A stretch of DNA of 45,311 nucleotides from Vitrella brassicaformis CCMP3155 (lineage: Eukaryota; Protista; Chromerida), in contig CDMY01000598.1 in the NCBI GenBank assembly GCA_001179505.1, positions 1 to 45,311 on the forward strand. The letters are read 5' to 3'. A program made the translations under genes and the position numbers. This document shows, piece by piece, positions 10,466 to 16,296 of the stretch. Numbering within the stretch: the stretch's first letter is position 1; every line of letters starts with the position of its first letter. The notes under the pieces were generated by a model. The model searched no databases, had not been told where the DNA came from, and was given only the letters and a program-made list of their open reading frames with translations.

Positions 10466-11182
10466 TCATGAAGGTGAGAGCCACACGATGGCATGATGAT
10501 GCGCGTGTGTCCTTATGTTCGTCTGTGTTAGTGGATTTGGTGCAGACACGTCGTGGGCCTTGTAGGTGGCGTGCTGGCAGATTCGTGTGCGTATTTTGCT
10601 GACTGTAGTACATGCGGATTCAGCTGTGAACGGCTCGTGCATGCCTGTGCTTTCCATCTCTGTCGCGGATGAATTTCACTCGTATGCACCTGTCGGTCTG
10701 CACACACGCGTCCGCTGATGAGTCCATCCCATTCGGCCGGACGCACCACATGCAGCCAACTTGCACACAGACCATCCCACTAAGAGCCACCCAGGAACTG
10801 CCCCGGTGGCCCTTTGCGAGCGAAGCGGGAAGAAGACTGACGAAAGAGTGCGAAAAGGGAGAAAGGAAGGCGTGATTGAGTGCATTGAGCCCAAGGTTTC
10901 ATTCATATTGATGACCGAAGCAACCACCGACGTCACACACTCGCAAACTGCACACAATGGGGCTGCCTCCACTGCAGATATGCACGCACTCATCATCATC
11001 TACATATTCTGATCTGATCCACTCATTCTTGCCGCTGCGCTGCACCCGCCAGCACGACTGTGCTCCCAACGCGAGCCCGTGGTCATCGCCGGGAGAGCCA
11101 ACTCGTCAAAGCATCTCGTCAAATCAAGAACGCGCCTCACCGCTGCGACTGTGTGGCAGCGTGGCTTGACTTGACAAGACCC

Positions 11183-14082
11183 TTATCCATCCAGCAGGCT
11201 TTGCAGGAGGCCGGCGTGCTCGTCCTGTTCATGCGGCGGCTCCTGCTCCTCTGTCTTCTCGGCCCGCAGGCCCTGCTCATGGGGACGCTCATCGGCCTCT
11301 TCCTCCCCATCTGATAAACACAACAGACAGACACGGAAGCCCCTCACATGACACGCATGTCTGTCTTATTGATCCTAAGTCGGCTGTGTGCTGGCGGGCT
11401 CAGCTCACCGAGTAGGAATTCCAGGCTTCTCGCGTGGCGGTCTTTCTGCCGCTTTTGCTCGTCAAGAGGGACGATGGCACCATGCATCTGCACGGCAGTG
11501 CGGGGCACACAGACGTGACGTGAGTGACGCAGCGAGTGGGGCGGGCGGCTGCCCCGGTGTTGTGTGTGTCACGTACATACCTCTTCGTATGGTGCCCGGG
11601 TGAGCTCCCCCCTGTCACGCTTGAGTGCCTCCTCAATCTGACACAGACAGGCGGGCATACACAGACAGGCGGGGGTCGATGGGCGGCCTGCATGCGCGTC
11701 ATTGGGCCGTGCCGTCCCGTACCTTGTCGGGTGCCCTTCTCTCCTCGACTTTGAATTTGTCTTTGATCTGCTTCTCAGACACCTCGGGGAACATCGACTT
11801 GACCAACATCAGATCCGACCCAAACGTGCGCAGCGCCTCATAAAACCTGAAGGATGGATGGGCGCATCCCATGCATGGAATGGATGGGCCGGTCACAGGC
11901 ACACGGCACGGCACTGCCTGTCTGTCTGCTTCGCCTGCCCTGCCCATGGTAAGTACCTGACCTGTCGGTAGCCTCTTGTGTCCATCTGTGTGCCTTTGTG
12001 TTCTTGTAGGCCTTGTCGAAGGGTTGCACCGACCCCTGCTGCACCTCATACGCCACCCCGCCCTCATACAGCACACACTCCTCCTCAACACCCATATGCC
12101 GACCCGCACCGATCTCCCGCGTCTCCTCGTCTATCACCAACTCGCCGTCCTCACCGATGCGCACCTGGGGGGCCGCGTGGAAGCGAGGGGCGGCGGCGGC
12201 CGCCGAGGACGGCCTGGCCAGAGCCGTGCTCGTGCCGCCGTCTGAATGCCAACACACCGGCACACACACAGAGAGCTGAGATGTGGGTGGGGTGCTAGGT
12301 GTTTCGGTGGGTTGGTAGGTACCGAGCAGCCCCAGGAGTGACTTCATGCCATTGTCGTCGTCTTGTCCGCCGGACATCCCCTCATCGAGCAGCATGGTGT
12401 CTGCAGCGGACATGTCAGGTGGCGGCTTGCGGTGCTGACGAGGGGGGCTGCGGTTGGCCCGCACGATGCCCCAGATGCTGTCAGGGTCTGATGGATGGAT
12501 GGACGCACAGCAACAGCCAAGGGAGAGAGCATTCATCCGTGTGTGTGTCTTGATCTCACTCATTGTCTCTCCGTGGTGCCTTCTTACCGACTGGTTCCCT
12601 TTTGACGCGGGGTTTCTTTCTCTTGGTCTGGGGCGCATCGTCGAGGCCCTTTGTTTGCTTGATTTCCTCCGCCTTGTCCTTGTACGCCTGCCGCTGTTGG
12701 TCGGTGAAGGCCTTCCACTGGCCCGACAGCGACTGCATCACCTGCTTCTGCGTCATGCCCTCGAAACCGCTCCGATTGGCCTTTCGACGCTCCTAAGACA
12801 TCCACACACACACACACACACACACACAAAATACATCTGAGATCCCGCGGCATGTCTTTGTGAATGTGTTCTCACCGCACAGAAGACGATGAATCCCGTG
12901 AGATGCCTCTTGCGCTGCTTCTTGTGAGTCCCAGTGGGGGAGGACATGCCGCCATCCTCACCCCCCCCTGCAGCAGCAGCAGCAGCTCCGCCAGGGTAGT
13001 CGACTGCCGCCGGGTCGTACTCCTCATCGTCCTCGTCCCGCCGCCGCTGCCGCCTCTTCTTCTTGCCGGCCTTTTTGGCAGAGGGTTGTGGTGGTGGGAC
13101 CAGTGGTGGTGGTGGTGGTAGCGGTGGCCACGTGAATTCAGGGGGAATCTCCATCTGCTCGGCCTCCTGCTCCATCCCCTGCTCCTCCTCTTCGGCTTCT
13201 TCCAGGTGAGGGTAGTCACCCGCCATTTCAGCCTCAGCCATCACATCAAGAGGAGGAGGCATGTCCACCCCCGCCCCTGCAGGCCCACCTCTCTTCCGCT
13301 GGGTGGCGCCAGTGCCGGCAGCGGCAGTGCTCCGCCCCCTGGACCGCTTGGACGACCTCGCTGGTCGACTTGGGGGCATCCCGACGTCCTCATCCAGCAC
13401 CGGCAGCCCCCCCACACTCTCACTCAGCGGCACTCCTCCCCCATCCCCGATAGAATGCGCCAGCATAGGCTGCGGCGGACCTCGCTCACGCACGCTCTCA
13501 GCCCTATGTGGCCGTAGCCGCACCTCTGAAGGAGCTGAGCCTCGCCGATTGCTGCCCACCGGAGGGCTCGTCCTCATCGACCGTGTGCCCCGCTGCCCGA
13601 GGCCATCCATCGGCAGCTGGACGTCCATCTGAGGGGACATTGGTGTGAAGTGCCGGTCCGAGAAGGTGGCGAGTCTCCCGGGCTCTGTCCTGTCGGCCAG
13701 ATAGGGGACTCTGGTGAAGGACAGCGCCCTGTCGGGCCTGCTGCGGGTCGGGGGCGGGCGGGGAGGGGTGAGGGACGAAAGATGGACAGGGGGGATGGAT
13801 GAGGAAGAGGATGACGCTGCCACCGCTGGCGCAGCAGCAGTTGCTGCGGCTGCGGATGGTTCTGAAGGAAGATAACACGAGCCGACCACACACGCTGGTA
13901 TTCGCATGCATTGCTCATCTGAACGAATATCCCTACGTACCCGGCGACAGTTGATGCTCAGCCTCGGCTCCGGCCCTGTGATTGCGTTCGCCCCTGTCCT
14001 CGGCAGTGCCATTGAGCTCTCCCTGCGCCTGGAGCAGACTCAGCAGCTCTCCAAGGCCGTCATTGTCGAAATCTGTCATCAT
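11183..14082 (-). CDS. BDP1: TFIIIB B'' subunit (BDP1-like SANT domain), apparently fused with an upstream HMG-box in one multi-exon gene
   Basis: PQVRIGEDGELVIDEE and RWTQEATDR|FYEALRTFGSDLMLVKSMFPEVSEKQIKDKFKVEERRAPDK are BDP1 motifs. KRHLTGFIVFCA|ERRKAN..QVMQSLSGQWKAFTDQQRQAYKDKA is an HMG-box. A phase-1 intron 12587-12488 (gtaaga..catcag) joins them in frame. BDP1 identity is firmer than the fusion. Confidence 0.8.
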
Positions 14083-14166
14083 GACCTGACGCAGAGGACA
14101 GCCTGTCCTTTCTGAAGGCTCTTTTTTCAAAGCCGTTCTTTCTCTTCCCACCCAGCCTCTCGCTCC

Positions 14167-14176
14167 AAGCTCGCAA
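14167..14176 (-). promoter_or_regulatory. TTGCGAGCTT element in the 164-bp interval between HMG-BDP1 and the orphan gene
   Basis: aagctcgcaa on the + strand. Confidence 0.55.
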
Positions 14177-14246
14177 ATTTTGCGGCAGCTGAGTCGTGGT
14201 AAGCTTGGAGTGTTCGAGTGAGTGTAGATCTCGTTGTATCGTCACG

Positions 14247-16296
14247 ATGGCATCGCCGAGCTCTTCCGGGCAAATTACTCATCCAGAGGTGAGAGCAGAA
14301 CAGCACACGACCGCACAGCGCAGAGGTGCACGGCCGGTGTGTCCCGCAGGCGTCTGTCGGTGCAACGTCGTGTCGGTATCGTGTGGGCAGCCGCGTGCTG
14401 ATGGTGTCGGACCAGAGAAGGGACGACAGGTTCCAGTGGGTGGAGGCCGAGGTGTACAAAATGGAGCCGGCCGAGGGCGGGACGCGGGTGTGCATGCGGG
14501 AGGTGGGTGGGATGGATGAGGAGTTTGAGCCGGTCGTGGTGCCACACACGACAGCGCCATTCCAACGACTCGATACTATAGACGCGGTTGGCATGGCACA
14601 CACACAGGCAGGGAGAGAGAGTGGTGCGGCATCACGGTGTACACACATCCCTCCTTGTATGTGTGTGACTGTGTGTCATCCATCAGGGATGCGATGGGTT
14701 CCATTACTTCGGCCACGTTCCCCCGACGCATACATCCCTCTGCAAAGCGTGGATGAGGTAGGCAGGCCTATCATGCAGAGGGAGGGATGGCATAGCTTTT
14801 TTCCACATCCGGGTGTGCAGGTTGATGCGGAGCGTTTCTGTGTGGACCCGAGCATCAAGCCGCGCGATGCCAAGGACCCGCTGTCCTTCCTGTTCCTGCC
14901 GCCATCCTTCATGCCCCCCCTCCCCACCGACGTCATCACCACCACACTTCTCCCCCTGTGTGGCGCGGACGCCCTCGCACTCAAGCTCAAGAGCACCCTC
15001 TGCTGCACCTCAACTTCGGTCGGCGCCGCCATCGGCTCCGCTGCGGTGTCGGCCATCGACAGCATCATCGAGAAGTGCAGCCTCACGGGAGCCATCGGCA
15101 TCGGCTACCTCCTCCGTCGGCACCTGCAGCGGCAGCCGGGTCGGGCGATGGACGTGCGTCGGCCATTCCGACTGATCCGGCTGCACTACCTGATGGTGAC
15201 GGGGGGCGACTGGCGCGGCACCGTGCCGCTGCTGCGGATGGCCAAGAGCTGTGGACGAGTGCAGCGTCTGCCCATCGAGCTGACGGGCGACGACCTGCAC
15301 CACGTGCCCAGCAAGGCCGTCATCGACAGCCGGCCGCCCAGCATCCGCCAGTACAGCCTCTTCAGCCACCGACTGGGCACCTTCATGGATCTGACGCGCA
15401 ATGCCCACGGGCGGGAGGTGCTGGGCGGGCGTGAGGTGAGAGTGCAGACGGTGCCGGTTCGATTCGATGATCGATTCGATGCCGCGGATCCCGCGTGCGG
15501 ACGTAAGAGAGGGGAGGGCACAGCACCACAGGAGAGGCAACTTGACATTGACGGTGTCTGCCGCTGTGTGTGTGTGTCTGCAGACCATCGTGACAAGTTC
15601 GGCAGCTTCCGTGAGTTGGCCATTGAGAGGTATGCAGCGACTGAAATGAGAGAACACAACACAGAAATGTGTCGTGTTGTCTGCCTTTCCGCTCCCTGCT
15701 CTTTCAGGTTGGCATTGCTGTCGTCGCATGTGGTGTCGGAGGCCGAGAATCATCTGTGGCCACTCTGGCGCGTATCGGCCGCTAAGGGGGATCGCATCAG
15801 TGCCCTGATCGACCAGCAGCGTCGTTCGTCGCTCCTGTGGGACTGTCGCACCATCAACTACTACATCGCCGGCCGCTACTACATCGCCGGCCGCGCCTCC
15901 TACCGACTCGTCATACTCTGTGGCGACGAGGAGGGCGATGACTTTGCGGCATACATCTGGATGGCCAGGTACCCTGGTGTGCGGGCATCCATCAAGCTCT
16001 ACACCACCGAGGCGCCCCGGCAGGGCGTCACTGGTCGTGCTGCCTTCCCCCGGGCAGTGGCCATCGCCCGCAACAAGATGGACCGCCCCTCCTTGGAGCT
16101 GCTGCCGGCCATTGGACATCTGACTCAGGTGCACACACGCGACACACATGAGGGGAGGGGAAGCCATGCAATGTCTGTCCACGTCTATTGCCTTTTCTCT
16201 TTCCTCCTTGGTGCGTGTCCGCATCAGACACCTCGCCGTCCCCGAGAGGCCTCGCGAGCTGTCTGTCGACCGCCTGGGAGGGCGGTGATGTCGTGA
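14247..16296 (+). CDS. Hypothetical protein of a lineage-specific family (C-terminal DDFAAYI..LYTTEA), possible N-terminal Tudor/SH3-like barrel
   Basis: 656-codon ORF with internal GT-AG introns; exon 1 MASPSSSGQITHPE (14247-14288) splices to 14350. Confidence 0.72.

What the first reader, a model, noticed from the sequence alone, without database searches (positions are those of the whole stretch)
11183..14082. Probable HMG-box + BDP1 (TFIIIB B'') fusion protein
The ORF track shows the HMG-box ORF ending at 12556 and the BDP1 part starting separately. However, only ~140 bp separate them, and that stretch looks like an intron (acacac..atccatccatcag). A canonical donor G|gtaaga at 12587 and acceptor catcag| at 12488 join KREPV to DPDSIWG in frame. 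Established: BDP1 normally carries a SANT domain without an HMG-box, and yeast HMG-box proteins Nhp6A/B assist Pol III transcription of SNR6. Inference: a Rosetta-stone fusion that builds the DNA-bending helper into TFIIIB.
Basis: partly seen in the sequence, partly recalled or inferred. Interest (0 to 1): 0.75.

Follow-up and report, generated by a model that had tools for sequence, protein, structure and literature searches.

The report
HMG-box fused to TFIIIB subunit BDP1
In the alga Vitrella brassicaformis, one spliced gene makes a single protein joining a DNA-bending HMG box to BDP1, a core RNA polymerase III start factor; dinoflagellates and malaria-type parasites show the same pairing, but in Toxoplasma the two halves are reported as separate proteins.

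Summary
Window 14082-11183 (minus strand) is one 9-exon gene. The proposed intron (12587-12488, GT..AG, 100 nt) is removed in intron-less contigs from four public runs in three studies. One 2662-nt contig covers the whole mRNA with all eight introns gone. Each exon translation matches the public 721-aa Vitrella brassicaformis protein P0001.

- **Domains:** P0001 passes Pfam's cut-offs for HMG_box (residues 365-422) and Myb_DNA-bind_7, the BDP1 extended SANT domain (579-643).
- **BDP1 identity:** its best solved relatives are human and yeast BDP1. It is the only such locus found in the genome.
- **Not unique:** at least 18 other BDP1 cluster representatives also pass both Pfam cut-offs. They come from dinoflagellate transcriptomes, Plasmodium "HMGB3" and the Besnoitia gene model. 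None of 36 long BDP1s across a starred tree split does.
- **Prior work:** a 2025 preprint shows the Toxoplasma locus yields two proteins, with the HMG half (TgHMGB3) co-purifying with SWI/SNF.

So the fusion is real here. The "built-in Nhp6-like helper" reading is only one of two live functional readings. This is a new variant of a known kind, of moderate interest. The scan had not noted this locus on other DNA.

The parts
13941..14082 (-). Exon 1: ATG at 14082, residues 1-47 plus one base; contigs show 5' UTR up to about 14135-14147
12876..13861 (-). Exon 2: residues 48-376. Long Pro/Ala/Ser/Arg-rich low-complexity region with no Pfam family of its own; its last 12 codons (12911-12876) encode the start of the HMG box
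12588..12792 (-). Exon 3: residues 377-444 plus one base. Rest of the HMG box (to residue 422, i.e. 12792-12655) and a basic tail KRKKPRVKREPV
   Evidence: HMG_box 24.8 bits on this exon alone; 34.8 bits on the whole protein; pLDDT 95-98, three helices
12488..12587 (-).
   Evidence: skipped in contigs of X1, X2, X6, X7
12323..12487 (-). Exon 4: residues 445-500, including the LLGLL motif conserved as DDLLGxL in related BDP1s
11962..12241 (-). Exon 5: residues 500-593. BDP1 beta-strand segment (PQVRIGEDGELVIDEE), aromatic linker, and start of the SANT domain (from 12005)
11723..11846 (-). Exon 6: residues 593-634, core of the SANT domain (Myb_DNA-bind_7)
   Evidence: (51.6 bits on this exon alone)
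11581..11637 (-). Exon 7: residues 635-653, helix following the SANT domain (end of the Pfam match at residue 643, base 11611)
11409..11487 (-). Exon 8: residues 654-680, including the HGxI motif conserved in related BDP1s
11183..11310 (-). Exon 9: acidic tail, C-terminal LLQSLLDG motif, TAA stop at 11185-11183
10740..11182 (-). 3' UTR as covered by transcript contigs (ends at 10740 in X7, about 10889-10891 in X1 and X6)

Best explanation
Window 14082-11183 (minus strand) is a single 9-exon gene of Vitrella brassicaformis. Its one spliced mRNA encodes a 721-residue protein, the only BDP1 (TFIIIB B'') orthologue found in this genome. About 100 residues upstream of the BDP1 core it carries one HMGB-type HMG box. 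The BDP1 core consists of a beta-strand segment, an aromatic linker that lies in the DNA minor groove, an extended SANT domain and a following helix.

Shown: the gene structure, the in-frame splice, the identity of both domains, the single BDP1 locus, and the occurrence of the same HMG-then-BDP1 order in dinoflagellate transcripts and apicomplexan gene models but not in other BDP1s.

Inferred: the BDP1 core docks on Brf1-TBP-DNA as in yeast and human. The tethered HMG box adds sequence-non-specific DNA binding and bending next to the TFIIIB-promoter complex, as free Nhp6 does in yeast. It may also, or instead, serve as the contact point for chromatin remodellers. The linkage most likely dates to the common ancestor of dinoflagellates, chromerids and apicomplexans, with later separation in Toxoplasma or loss in Cryptosporidium, Theileria and gregarines.

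My odds: one mRNA and one ORF, 0.95; a true BDP1 orthologue, 0.9; the HMG box acts in Pol III initiation, about 0.45.
For: Splicing: the junction 12588|12487 and all other junctions appear in contigs from 4 runs in 3 studies. One contig covers the whole mRNA. There are no mismatches in the CDS.

Model: exon translations equal P0001.

Domains: HMG_box 34.8 bits (cut-off 25.4); Myb_DNA-bind_7 74.3 bits (cut-off 31).

BDP1 identity: the best solved relatives are human BDP1 245-361 (8.8e-14) and yeast Bdp1 357-474 (3.1e-11), against 0.36 for CoREST SANT domains. The human stretch lies inside the 'extended SANT domain' 241-396 that suffices for TFIIIB binding (PMC5526994).

Structure: the AlphaFold model gives pLDDT above 90 for both domains. 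The top Foldseek hits are Bdp1 chains of Pol III initiation complexes, followed by HMG boxes.

Genome: one PF15963 locus and one Brf1 locus. No close paralogue of the HMG box exists.

Lineage: HMG_box plus Myb_DNA-bind_7 both pass Pfam cut-offs in Besnoitia, two Plasmodium species, Polykrikos and Biecheleria (dinoflagellates) and 12 unnamed or Symbiodinium-cluster transcript-like contigs. All 22 HMG-bearing BDP1s lie on one side of a 97% SH-aLRT split. That label needs only 4 changes on the tree, against a mean of 18.6 when shuffled. 0 of 36 long BDP1s on the other side carry an HMG box.

Box type: Thr sits where sequence-specific SRY/SOX boxes have Asn, as in HMGB and Nhp6 (alignment). Nhp6's role in TFIIIB placement is from PMC11346459.
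Against: There are no protein-level data, so processing into two polypeptides cannot be excluded. Contigs drop rare isoforms and cannot map transcript starts or ends. An additional BDP1-only transcript from an internal start (first ATG at 12413) is therefore not excluded.

In Toxoplasma the annotated fusion is two transcripts and two proteins, and only the HMG part binds the SWI/SNF complex. PfHMGB3 was pulled down together with a SWIB-domain protein. Both point to a chromatin-remodeller role for the HMG part.

By sequence, the Vitrella box is no closer to the other BDP1-linked boxes than other Vitrella HMG boxes are (pairwise E only about 1e-3). Common origin of the HMG modules therefore rests on shared architecture alone.

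Human BDP1 R334, shown to matter for U6 transcription, aligns with Glu here.
Confidence: 0.62

Rival explanations
1. Same fused protein, but the HMG module is the counterpart of apicomplexan HMGB3, a DNA-binding subunit or partner of SWI/SNF remodellers. Its job would be chromatin remodelling, either independent of Pol III or recruiting remodellers to Pol III genes, rather than Nhp6-like bending inside TFIIIB.
For: The HMG-then-BDP1 order is shared with the Toxoplasma, Neospora, Besnoitia and Plasmodium loci. TgHMGB3 peptides co-purify with TgSWI3, while the BDP1 part does not (bioRxiv 10.1101/2025.07.16.665172). The authors list TgHMGB3 as a possible substrate-recognition subunit. PfHMGB3 was enriched with a SWIB/MDM2 protein and bromodomain proteins in DNA pull-downs (PMC5899830).
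Against: Orthology of the HMG boxes is not shown by sequence. Vitrella has one box and the apicomplexans two. In Vitrella the box sits only about 100 residues from the BDP1 core on the same chain, so any remodeller contact would be dragged to TFIIIB sites. There are no interaction data for Vitrella.
Confidence: 0.28
2. Two genes as in Toxoplasma: an HMG-box gene ending at the stop at 12556 and a short BDP1 gene starting at 12413. The spliced junction would then be a minor read-through product.
For: There is the Toxoplasma precedent. An in-frame stop follows 10 codons into the unspliced intron, and an ATG lies at 12413. Cryptosporidium BDP1s are only 255-286 aa, so a short BDP1 is viable. Some P. 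falciparum strain annotations list a separate 310-aa 'transcription factor TFIIIB'.
Against: The junction appears in all four runs from three studies. Contigs run unbranched through it for up to 2.6 kb, and no contig retaining the intron appears among the pieces listed (25 further pieces were not shown). The gap is a 100-nt canonical GT..AG intron in the correct phase, leaving no room for a terminator plus promoter. The dinoflagellate fused ORFs come from transcriptome assemblies.
Confidence: 0.06
3. The fusion arose independently in Vitrella (convergence with dinoflagellates and apicomplexans), or the C-terminal domain is a generic SANT chromatin protein rather than BDP1.
For: The HMG boxes show no subfamily signal. 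Box number and spacer length differ strongly between lineages. Several apicomplexan lineages lack the box.
Against: Three or more independent N-terminal HMG acquisitions in sister lineages, against none in 36 outgroup BDP1s, is unparsimonious. The non-BDP1 reading is contradicted by a PF15963 score of 74 bits, by BDP1-only top hits in solved structures that include the beta-strand and linker segments, and by the single genomic locus.
Confidence: 0.1

Closest known systems
BDP1 / TFIIIB B'' (yeast Bdp1, human BDP1)
   Same: It has the beta-strand segment, the aromatic linker, the extended SANT domain and the following helix. These align to human 245-361 and yeast 357-474. The fold matches Bdp1 chains in Pol III initiation complexes. 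It is single-copy in the genome.
   Different: It carries an HMG box about 100 residues upstream of the core. It lacks the VKMxDLC-type upstream motif seen in the outgroup consensus and has an LLGLL motif there instead. It has a short acidic C-terminal tail ending in LLQSLLDG. Human R334 is Glu here.
Apicomplexan 'HMGB3' / TGME49_203950 locus (PfHMGB3, TgHMGB3 + TgBDP1)
   Same: HMG box(es) lie upstream of a BDP1-type SANT domain on the same strand in the same gene model. The BDP1 cores group on the same side of the tree.
   Different: The apicomplexan models have two boxes and about 760-1500 residues between box and core, against one box and about 100 residues here. In Toxoplasma the locus is reported to give two transcripts and two proteins. 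In Vitrella the two parts are joined by a verified in-frame splice.
Dinoflagellate HMG-BDP1 proteins (Polykrikos kofoidii, Biecheleria cincta, Symbiodinium cluster, unnamed marine contigs)
   Same: They are single ORFs of about 640-1170 aa from transcriptome assemblies, with HMG box(es) N-terminal to the BDP1 core. They share the DDLLGxL, beta-hairpin, HGKID and C-terminal LxALFD motifs.
   Different: They usually show two to four HMG-like stretches. BDP1 core identity to Vitrella is only about 36-42%. They have not been described in any paper I could find.
Nhp6A/B (yeast HMGB proteins acting at Pol III genes)
   Same: It is a single HMGB-type box (Nhp6A hit at 3.8e-5). Nhp6 has a documented role in TFIIIB/TFIIIC placement and start-site fidelity at SNR6 and tRNA genes (PMC11346459).
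   Different: Nhp6 is a free 93-aa protein that also loads FACT. Here the box is covalently tethered to a TFIIIB subunit. A functional equivalence has not been tested.
SMARCE1/BAF57-type HMG subunit of SWI/SNF
   Same: It is an HMG-box protein associated with a SWI3-containing remodeller, as reported for TgHMGB3.
   Different: No sequence-specific relationship was tested or shown here. That subunit is not linked to BDP1 in animals or fungi.

Membership tests
BDP1 (TFIIIB B'') | Extended SANT domain (Pfam Myb_DNA-bind_7) above the curated cut-off | tested here: met
   74.3 bits against a cut-off of 31, residues 579-643. Exon 6 alone gives 51.6 bits. The six-frame genome hit gives 55.2 bits.
BDP1 (TFIIIB B'') | Beta-strand segment and aromatic linker N-terminal of the SANT domain, as in human residues 245-302 | tested here: met
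   The phmmer alignment to 5n9g_C, 9fso_T and 8ity_W covers PQVRIGEDGELVIDEE and QPFDKAYKNTKAHRW. Two short strands are predicted at model residues 187-197. The segment is conserved across relatives. Its definition is taken from PMC5526994.
BDP1 (TFIIIB B'') | Best relatives among solved structures are BDP1, not other SANT proteins | tested here: met
   Sequence search: BDP1 at 9e-14 to 2e-10, against MYB21 at 0.068 and CoREST at 0.36 or weaker. Foldseek ranks 1-5 are Bdp1 chains.
BDP1 (TFIIIB B'') | Sole orthologue in the genome, with its partner Brf1 present | tested here: met
   One PF15963 locus and one PF07741 (BRF1) locus in the 72.7-Mb assembly. The six-frame exon-wise search gives lower bounds only.
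BDP1 (TFIIIB B'') | Binds Brf1-TBP-DNA and is required for Pol III initiation | not testable with these tools
   This needs biochemistry or ChIP.
HMG-box (HMGB type) | Pfam HMG_box above the cut-off and a three-helix L-shaped fold | tested here: met
   34.8 bits against a cut-off of 25.4, residues 365-422. Helices at model residues 31-42, 52-65 and 68-84 have pLDDT 95-98. Foldseek hits HMGB2, HMGB3, SOX and Nhp6A boxes. Thr sits at the position that is Asn in SRY/SOX.
HMG-box (HMGB type) | Binds and bends DNA | not testable with these tools
   This needs EMSA, FRET or circularisation assays.
Single-polypeptide HMG-BDP1 fusion | Both domains in one reading frame of one mature mRNA | tested here: met
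   The in-frame junction 12588|12487 is seen in 4 runs from 3 studies, and a full-length spliced contig exists. Phase was checked.
Single-polypeptide HMG-BDP1 fusion | One protein product in the cell | not testable with these tools
   No proteomic data were available. The Toxoplasma counterpart is two proteins.
Apicomplexan HMGB3 (SWI/SNF-associated) | HMG module orthologous to TgHMGB3/PfHMGB3 boxes | tested here: inconclusive
   Position upstream of BDP1 is shared. However, pairwise E is only about 1e-3. Apicomplexan boxes find nothing in G000. A subfamily HMM does not single out this box among ten Vitrella HMG loci.
Apicomplexan HMGB3 (SWI/SNF-associated) | Co-purifies with SWI3/BRG1-type remodeller | not testable with these tools
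   This is known only for Toxoplasma.

The most novel reading that the evidence does not exclude
An HMG-box-bearing BDP1 is the ancestral state for all Myzozoa (dinoflagellates, chromerids, apicomplexans). On this reading, a large eukaryotic lineage ran Pol III initiation with a TFIIIB whose B'' subunit carries its own HMGB module. The SWI/SNF-associated 'HMGB3' of Toxoplasma would be the product of a later gene fission of that protein, and the protein named HMGB3 in Plasmodium would be its BDP1. The fused forms in Vitrella and dinoflagellates would then point to an otherwise unknown physical link between TFIIIB and SWI/SNF-type remodelling.
Probability: 0.35. Interest if true: 0.7.

Novelty: new variant of a known kind. 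Interest (0 to 1): 0.55.

Why it matters
BDP1 is the Pol III-specific TFIIIB subunit that locks the factor on DNA and is needed for promoter opening. Outside this lineage it has no HMG box, and HMG help at Pol III genes comes from a free protein (Nhp6 in yeast).

A verified covalent HMG-BDP1 protein in a free-living relative of apicomplexans, shared with dinoflagellates, does three things:
- It gives an evolutionary frame for the puzzling apicomplexan locus annotated as 'HMGB3' or 'myb-like / HMG box protein'. A 2025 preprint split that locus into two proteins in Toxoplasma.
- It raises the testable question of whether Plasmodium HMGB3 is a fused BDP1 or two proteins.
- It offers a natural 'Rosetta-stone' hint that an HMGB module, possibly the SWI/SNF-linked one, works together with TFIIIB.

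It is not a new kind of system. Both domains are ordinary, and the domain pair is already visible in public annotations.

Tried and rejected
**Searches that gave nothing**
- Word-index protein searches with the BDP1 part of P0001 found only the query itself. A 28-sequence alignment added one gregarine and one fungal protein. Named orthologues from Chromera, colpodellids, perkinsids or ciliates could therefore not be obtained. This says nothing about their architecture.
- The look-up of encoding contigs has no record for P0001.
- The ESM Atlas neighbours were BDP1-only or HMG-only clusters. No cluster had both families, but only clusters of 50 or more members are searched.

**Tests of HMG-box orthology, all inconclusive**
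- Apicomplexan HMG boxes used as queries against G000 found nothing.
- An HMM of BDP1-linked boxes built without Vitrella scored the window's box at 23.9 bits. Other Vitrella HMG loci scored 25.9, 25.3 and 23.5 bits.
- The N-terminal 360 residues share nothing with the Neospora or dinoflagellate proteins apart from the box.

**Other**
- I looked for the dinoflagellate spliced leader on contig L005, which encodes P0018. None was found, and the contig may not reach the 5' end.
- The bacterial promoter/terminator scan of the upstream region is irrelevant for a eukaryote and found nothing.
- 'BDP1' in most apicomplexan papers means bromodomain protein 1, not TFIIIB B''.
- Rejected: a non-BDP1 SANT protein; recent duplication or assembly chimera as the source of the HMG box, since the genome has no close paralogue and transcripts are colinear with the assembly.

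Exons were searched one by one by reference. All whole-protein work used the public record P0001, which each exon translation matches. No complex prediction was run.
Full report
**1. The observation**

Reading the minus strand of 14400-10900 gives a coherent nine-exon model:
- exon 1: 14082-13941
- exon 2: 13861-12876
- exon 3: 12792-12588
- exon 4: 12487-12323
- exon 5: 12241-11962
- exon 6: 11846-11723
- exon 7: 11637-11581
- exon 8: 11487-11409
- exon 9: 11310-11183

All eight introns are 79-115 nt with GT..AG ends, and the phases fit. If it is not removed, the HMG-box frame stops at 12556 after GKKAPRRDNE. If it is removed...KRKKPRVKREPV continues in frame as DPDSIWGIVRAN....

**2. RNA evidence**

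One search for public runs listed eight holders. I laid four of them, from three studies, on 10600-14700. All four contain contigs that skip exactly 12488-12587. Six further introns are skipped in the joints table. The seventh, the (TG)n-containing intron 2, was dropped from that table as a repeat but is visibly skipped in the contig pieces table.

X7 record 10 is a 2662-nt contig running from 10740 to 14135 with every intron removed. X6 record 8 (2001 nt) runs from 10889 to 13542 across the junction. There are no other letters or gaps within the gene. The runs are not labelled as RNA, but contigs that lack eight canonical introns can only derive from cDNA.

Contigs cannot show transcript ends or rare isoforms. 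An additional internal-start or intron-retaining minor form is therefore not excluded.

**3. The protein**

Exon 3 alone hits HMG_box and HMG_box_2, and exon 6 alone hits Myb_DNA-bind_7 at 8e-14.

A word search with the 419-aa open frame that contains exon 2 returned the public record P0001. This is a 721-aa protein of Vitrella brassicaformis CCMP3155, named 'HMG box domain-containing protein' in UniRef, with precomputed PF00505 and PF15963 domains. Every exon translation is found in P0001 in order, so the public model equals the RNA-supported one. All whole-protein analyses use P0001.

Pfam on P0001 gives HMG_box at residues 365-422 (34.8 bits, cut-off 25.4) and Myb_DNA-bind_7 at 579-643 (74.3 bits, cut-off 31). 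The first 360 residues are low-complexity with no family hit.

**4. Is it BDP1?**

- Against all solved structures, residues 522-668 match human BDP1 (5n9g_C, 8.8e-14; residues 245-361 in the longer chains 9fso_T and 8ity_W) and yeast Bdp1 357-474 (3.1e-11). Other SANT proteins score 0.068 or worse.
- The matched human stretch lies within the 'extended SANT domain' 241-396, which suffices for binding Brf2-TBP-DNA. It includes the beta-strand segment and the aromatic 'Bdp1 linker' that lies in the minor groove (PMC5526994).
- An AlphaFold model of residues 340-721, built with 26 relatives, gives pLDDT 91-98 for the SANT domain and 95-98 for the three-helix HMG box, with disordered linkers.
- Its best Foldseek matches are Bdp1 chains in yeast and human Pol III initiation complexes, then HMG boxes.
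- The 72.7-Mb, 1064-contig assembly has a single PF15963 locus, this one, and a single Brf1 locus.
- The HMG box has no close paralogue in the genome. Its best solved relatives are HMGB1 box B, HMGB3, SOX5 and Nhp6A. It has Thr where sequence-specific boxes have Asn.

**5. How widespread is the architecture?**

An exhaustive HMMER search with residues 500-680 found 2281 relatives, and the best 150 cluster representatives were returned.

A local HMM of HMG boxes flagged about two dozen of the 150 as carrying one or more boxes upstream of the BDP1 core. Pfam confirmed both families above cut-off in all 17 that I submitted.

Source names:
- Besnoitia besnoiti (2415 aa).
- Neospora caninum (2488 aa, named 'myb-like DNA-binding / high mobility group box domain-containing protein'). 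For this one, the boxes are supported by the local HMM and its product name only, because I did not scan it with Pfam.
- Plasmodium coatneyi (1769 aa).
- P. malariae (2677 aa, named 'high mobility group protein B3').
- The dinoflagellates Polykrikos kofoidii and Biecheleria cincta (Trinity transcripts).
- A cluster that includes a Symbiodinium fragment.
- Many 2-3 kb Logan or JGI contigs almost filled by the ORF.

Lineages without a box: Cryptosporidium BDP1s are 255-286 aa with no box. Theileria BDP1s (691-1072 aa) and a complete gregarine ORF (Ancora, 533 aa) also lack one.

On a tree of the BDP1 core, all 22 HMG-bearing rows fall on one side of a starred split (97% SH-aLRT). That side also holds Cryptosporidium, gregarines and Theileria. 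The dinoflagellate clade (95%) has 18 HMG-bearing rows and none that is long and lacks a box. The HMG label needs 4 changes, against a mean of 18.6 when shuffled (0 of 500 shuffles as low). On the other side, 0 of 36 proteins with at least 250 residues upstream of the core have an HMG box by Pfam.

The relatives share further motifs with Vitrella:
- DDLLGxL before the beta-hairpin (KSLLGLL in Vitrella);
- HGKID after the SANT helix;
- a terminal LxALFD (LLQSLLDG in Vitrella).

**6. What is already known**

- PfHMGB3 is drawn with two HMG boxes plus a SANT domain in PMC9732239. It is listed as a chromatin-binding factor in PMC2821373.
- The decisive prior work is bioRxiv 10.1101/2025.07.16.665172. 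TGME49_203950 is called a homologue of BDP1 and of Plasmodium HMGB3. The authors note that BDP1 is not normally associated with HMG domains. They show by peptide mapping, RNA-seq coverage, cDNA PCR and double tagging that the Toxoplasma locus gives two transcripts and two proteins. Only TgHMGB3 (N-terminal) co-purifies with TgSWI3, while TgBDP1 (C-terminal) does not.
- PfHMGB3 was enriched together with a SWIB-domain protein in DNA pull-downs (PMC5899830).
- I found no paper on the fused form in Vitrella or dinoflagellates, or on the lineage-wide pattern.

**7. Interpretation**

The gene, the splice, the two domains and BDP1 orthology are well supported. The fusion differs from the Toxoplasma case because the two halves are separated by one short phase-correct intron and about 100 residues, not about 850 residues.

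What the HMG box does is inference, and two readings remain.
- *Nhp6-like role.* A tethered box binds and bends DNA next to TFIIIB. In yeast, Nhp6 improves TFIIIB placement and start-site fidelity (PMC11346459).
- *HMGB3-like role.* The box provides a link to SWI/SNF-type remodellers, as the Toxoplasma data suggest.

These are not mutually exclusive.

Orthology of the HMG modules across lineages could not be shown by sequence. It rests on the shared and otherwise unseen domain order. I judge an ancestral linkage, with later fission or loss, as more likely than repeated convergence. Data from Chromera, colpodellids, perkinsids and ciliates were out of reach.

**8. Verdict**

The locus is an HMG-bearing variant of the known BDP1 family. 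The variant is already visible in automated annotation and partly discussed for apicomplexans. Here it is shown to be a genuine single mRNA in Vitrella, and the same single-ORF arrangement is seen in dinoflagellate transcriptome assemblies. Interest is moderate (0.55).

Noticed in passing
window 12242-12322 (minus strand, intron 4): This 81-nt intron is a multiple of three with no in-frame stop. The 266-aa ORF 11838..12638 reads straight through it. Retention would insert 27 residues between the LLGLL motif and the BDP1 beta-strand segment without breaking the frame. All contigs laid had it spliced out.
   Followed up: partly
window about 12803-12830 (intron 2): A (TG)n microsatellite lies inside the intron that splits the HMG box after FCA|ERR. 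The read tool skipped it as a repeat, so this junction is visible only in the contig pieces table.
   Followed up: no
window 14371-14495: Transcript contigs over the upstream neighbouring region differ from the assembly at 14412 (C>G), 14414 (A>G) and 14429 (G>A) in three runs. This may be an allele, a paralogue or an assembly error.
   Followed up: no
window 10740-10891: The 3' ends of the transcript contigs differ: 10740 in X7 against 10889-10891 in X1 and X6. This may reflect alternative polyadenylation or overlap with a downstream transcript. Contigs cannot decide.
   Followed up: no
P0001 residues 10-18, 493-500, 713-720 (window about 14055-14029, 12343-12323 plus 12241-12240, 11209-11186): Three short LLxxLL-type motifs occur (GELLSLLQ, KSLLGLL, LLQSLLDG). 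The second and third are conserved in dinoflagellate and apicomplexan BDP1s as DDLLGxL and a terminal LxALFD. The outgroup BDP1 consensus shows a VKMxDLC motif at the upstream position instead. They may be lineage-specific docking motifs.
   Followed up: partly
P0163 (P. falciparum RAJ116) versus P0024/P0050 (other Plasmodium): Different Plasmodium annotations treat the locus differently. Some give one protein of 1769-2677 aa with two HMG boxes plus the BDP1 SANT domain. Some P. falciparum strain records list a separate 310-aa 'transcription factor TFIIIB'. Whether Plasmodium HMGB3 is fused or split appears unresolved.
   Followed up: partly
PMC9732239 draws a similar HMG-plus-histone-fold (CBFD_NFYB_HMF) arrangement for PfHMGB4, though with a single HMG box. 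Both unusual Plasmodium HMGB architectures (HMGB3 and HMGB4) therefore seem to predate parasitism.
   Followed up: no
G000 HMG_box six-frame search: The window's own HMG box was not among the nine genome-wide PF00505 hits, because intron 2 splits it. Exon-wise family counts in this intron-rich genome are clear underestimates.
   Followed up: yes
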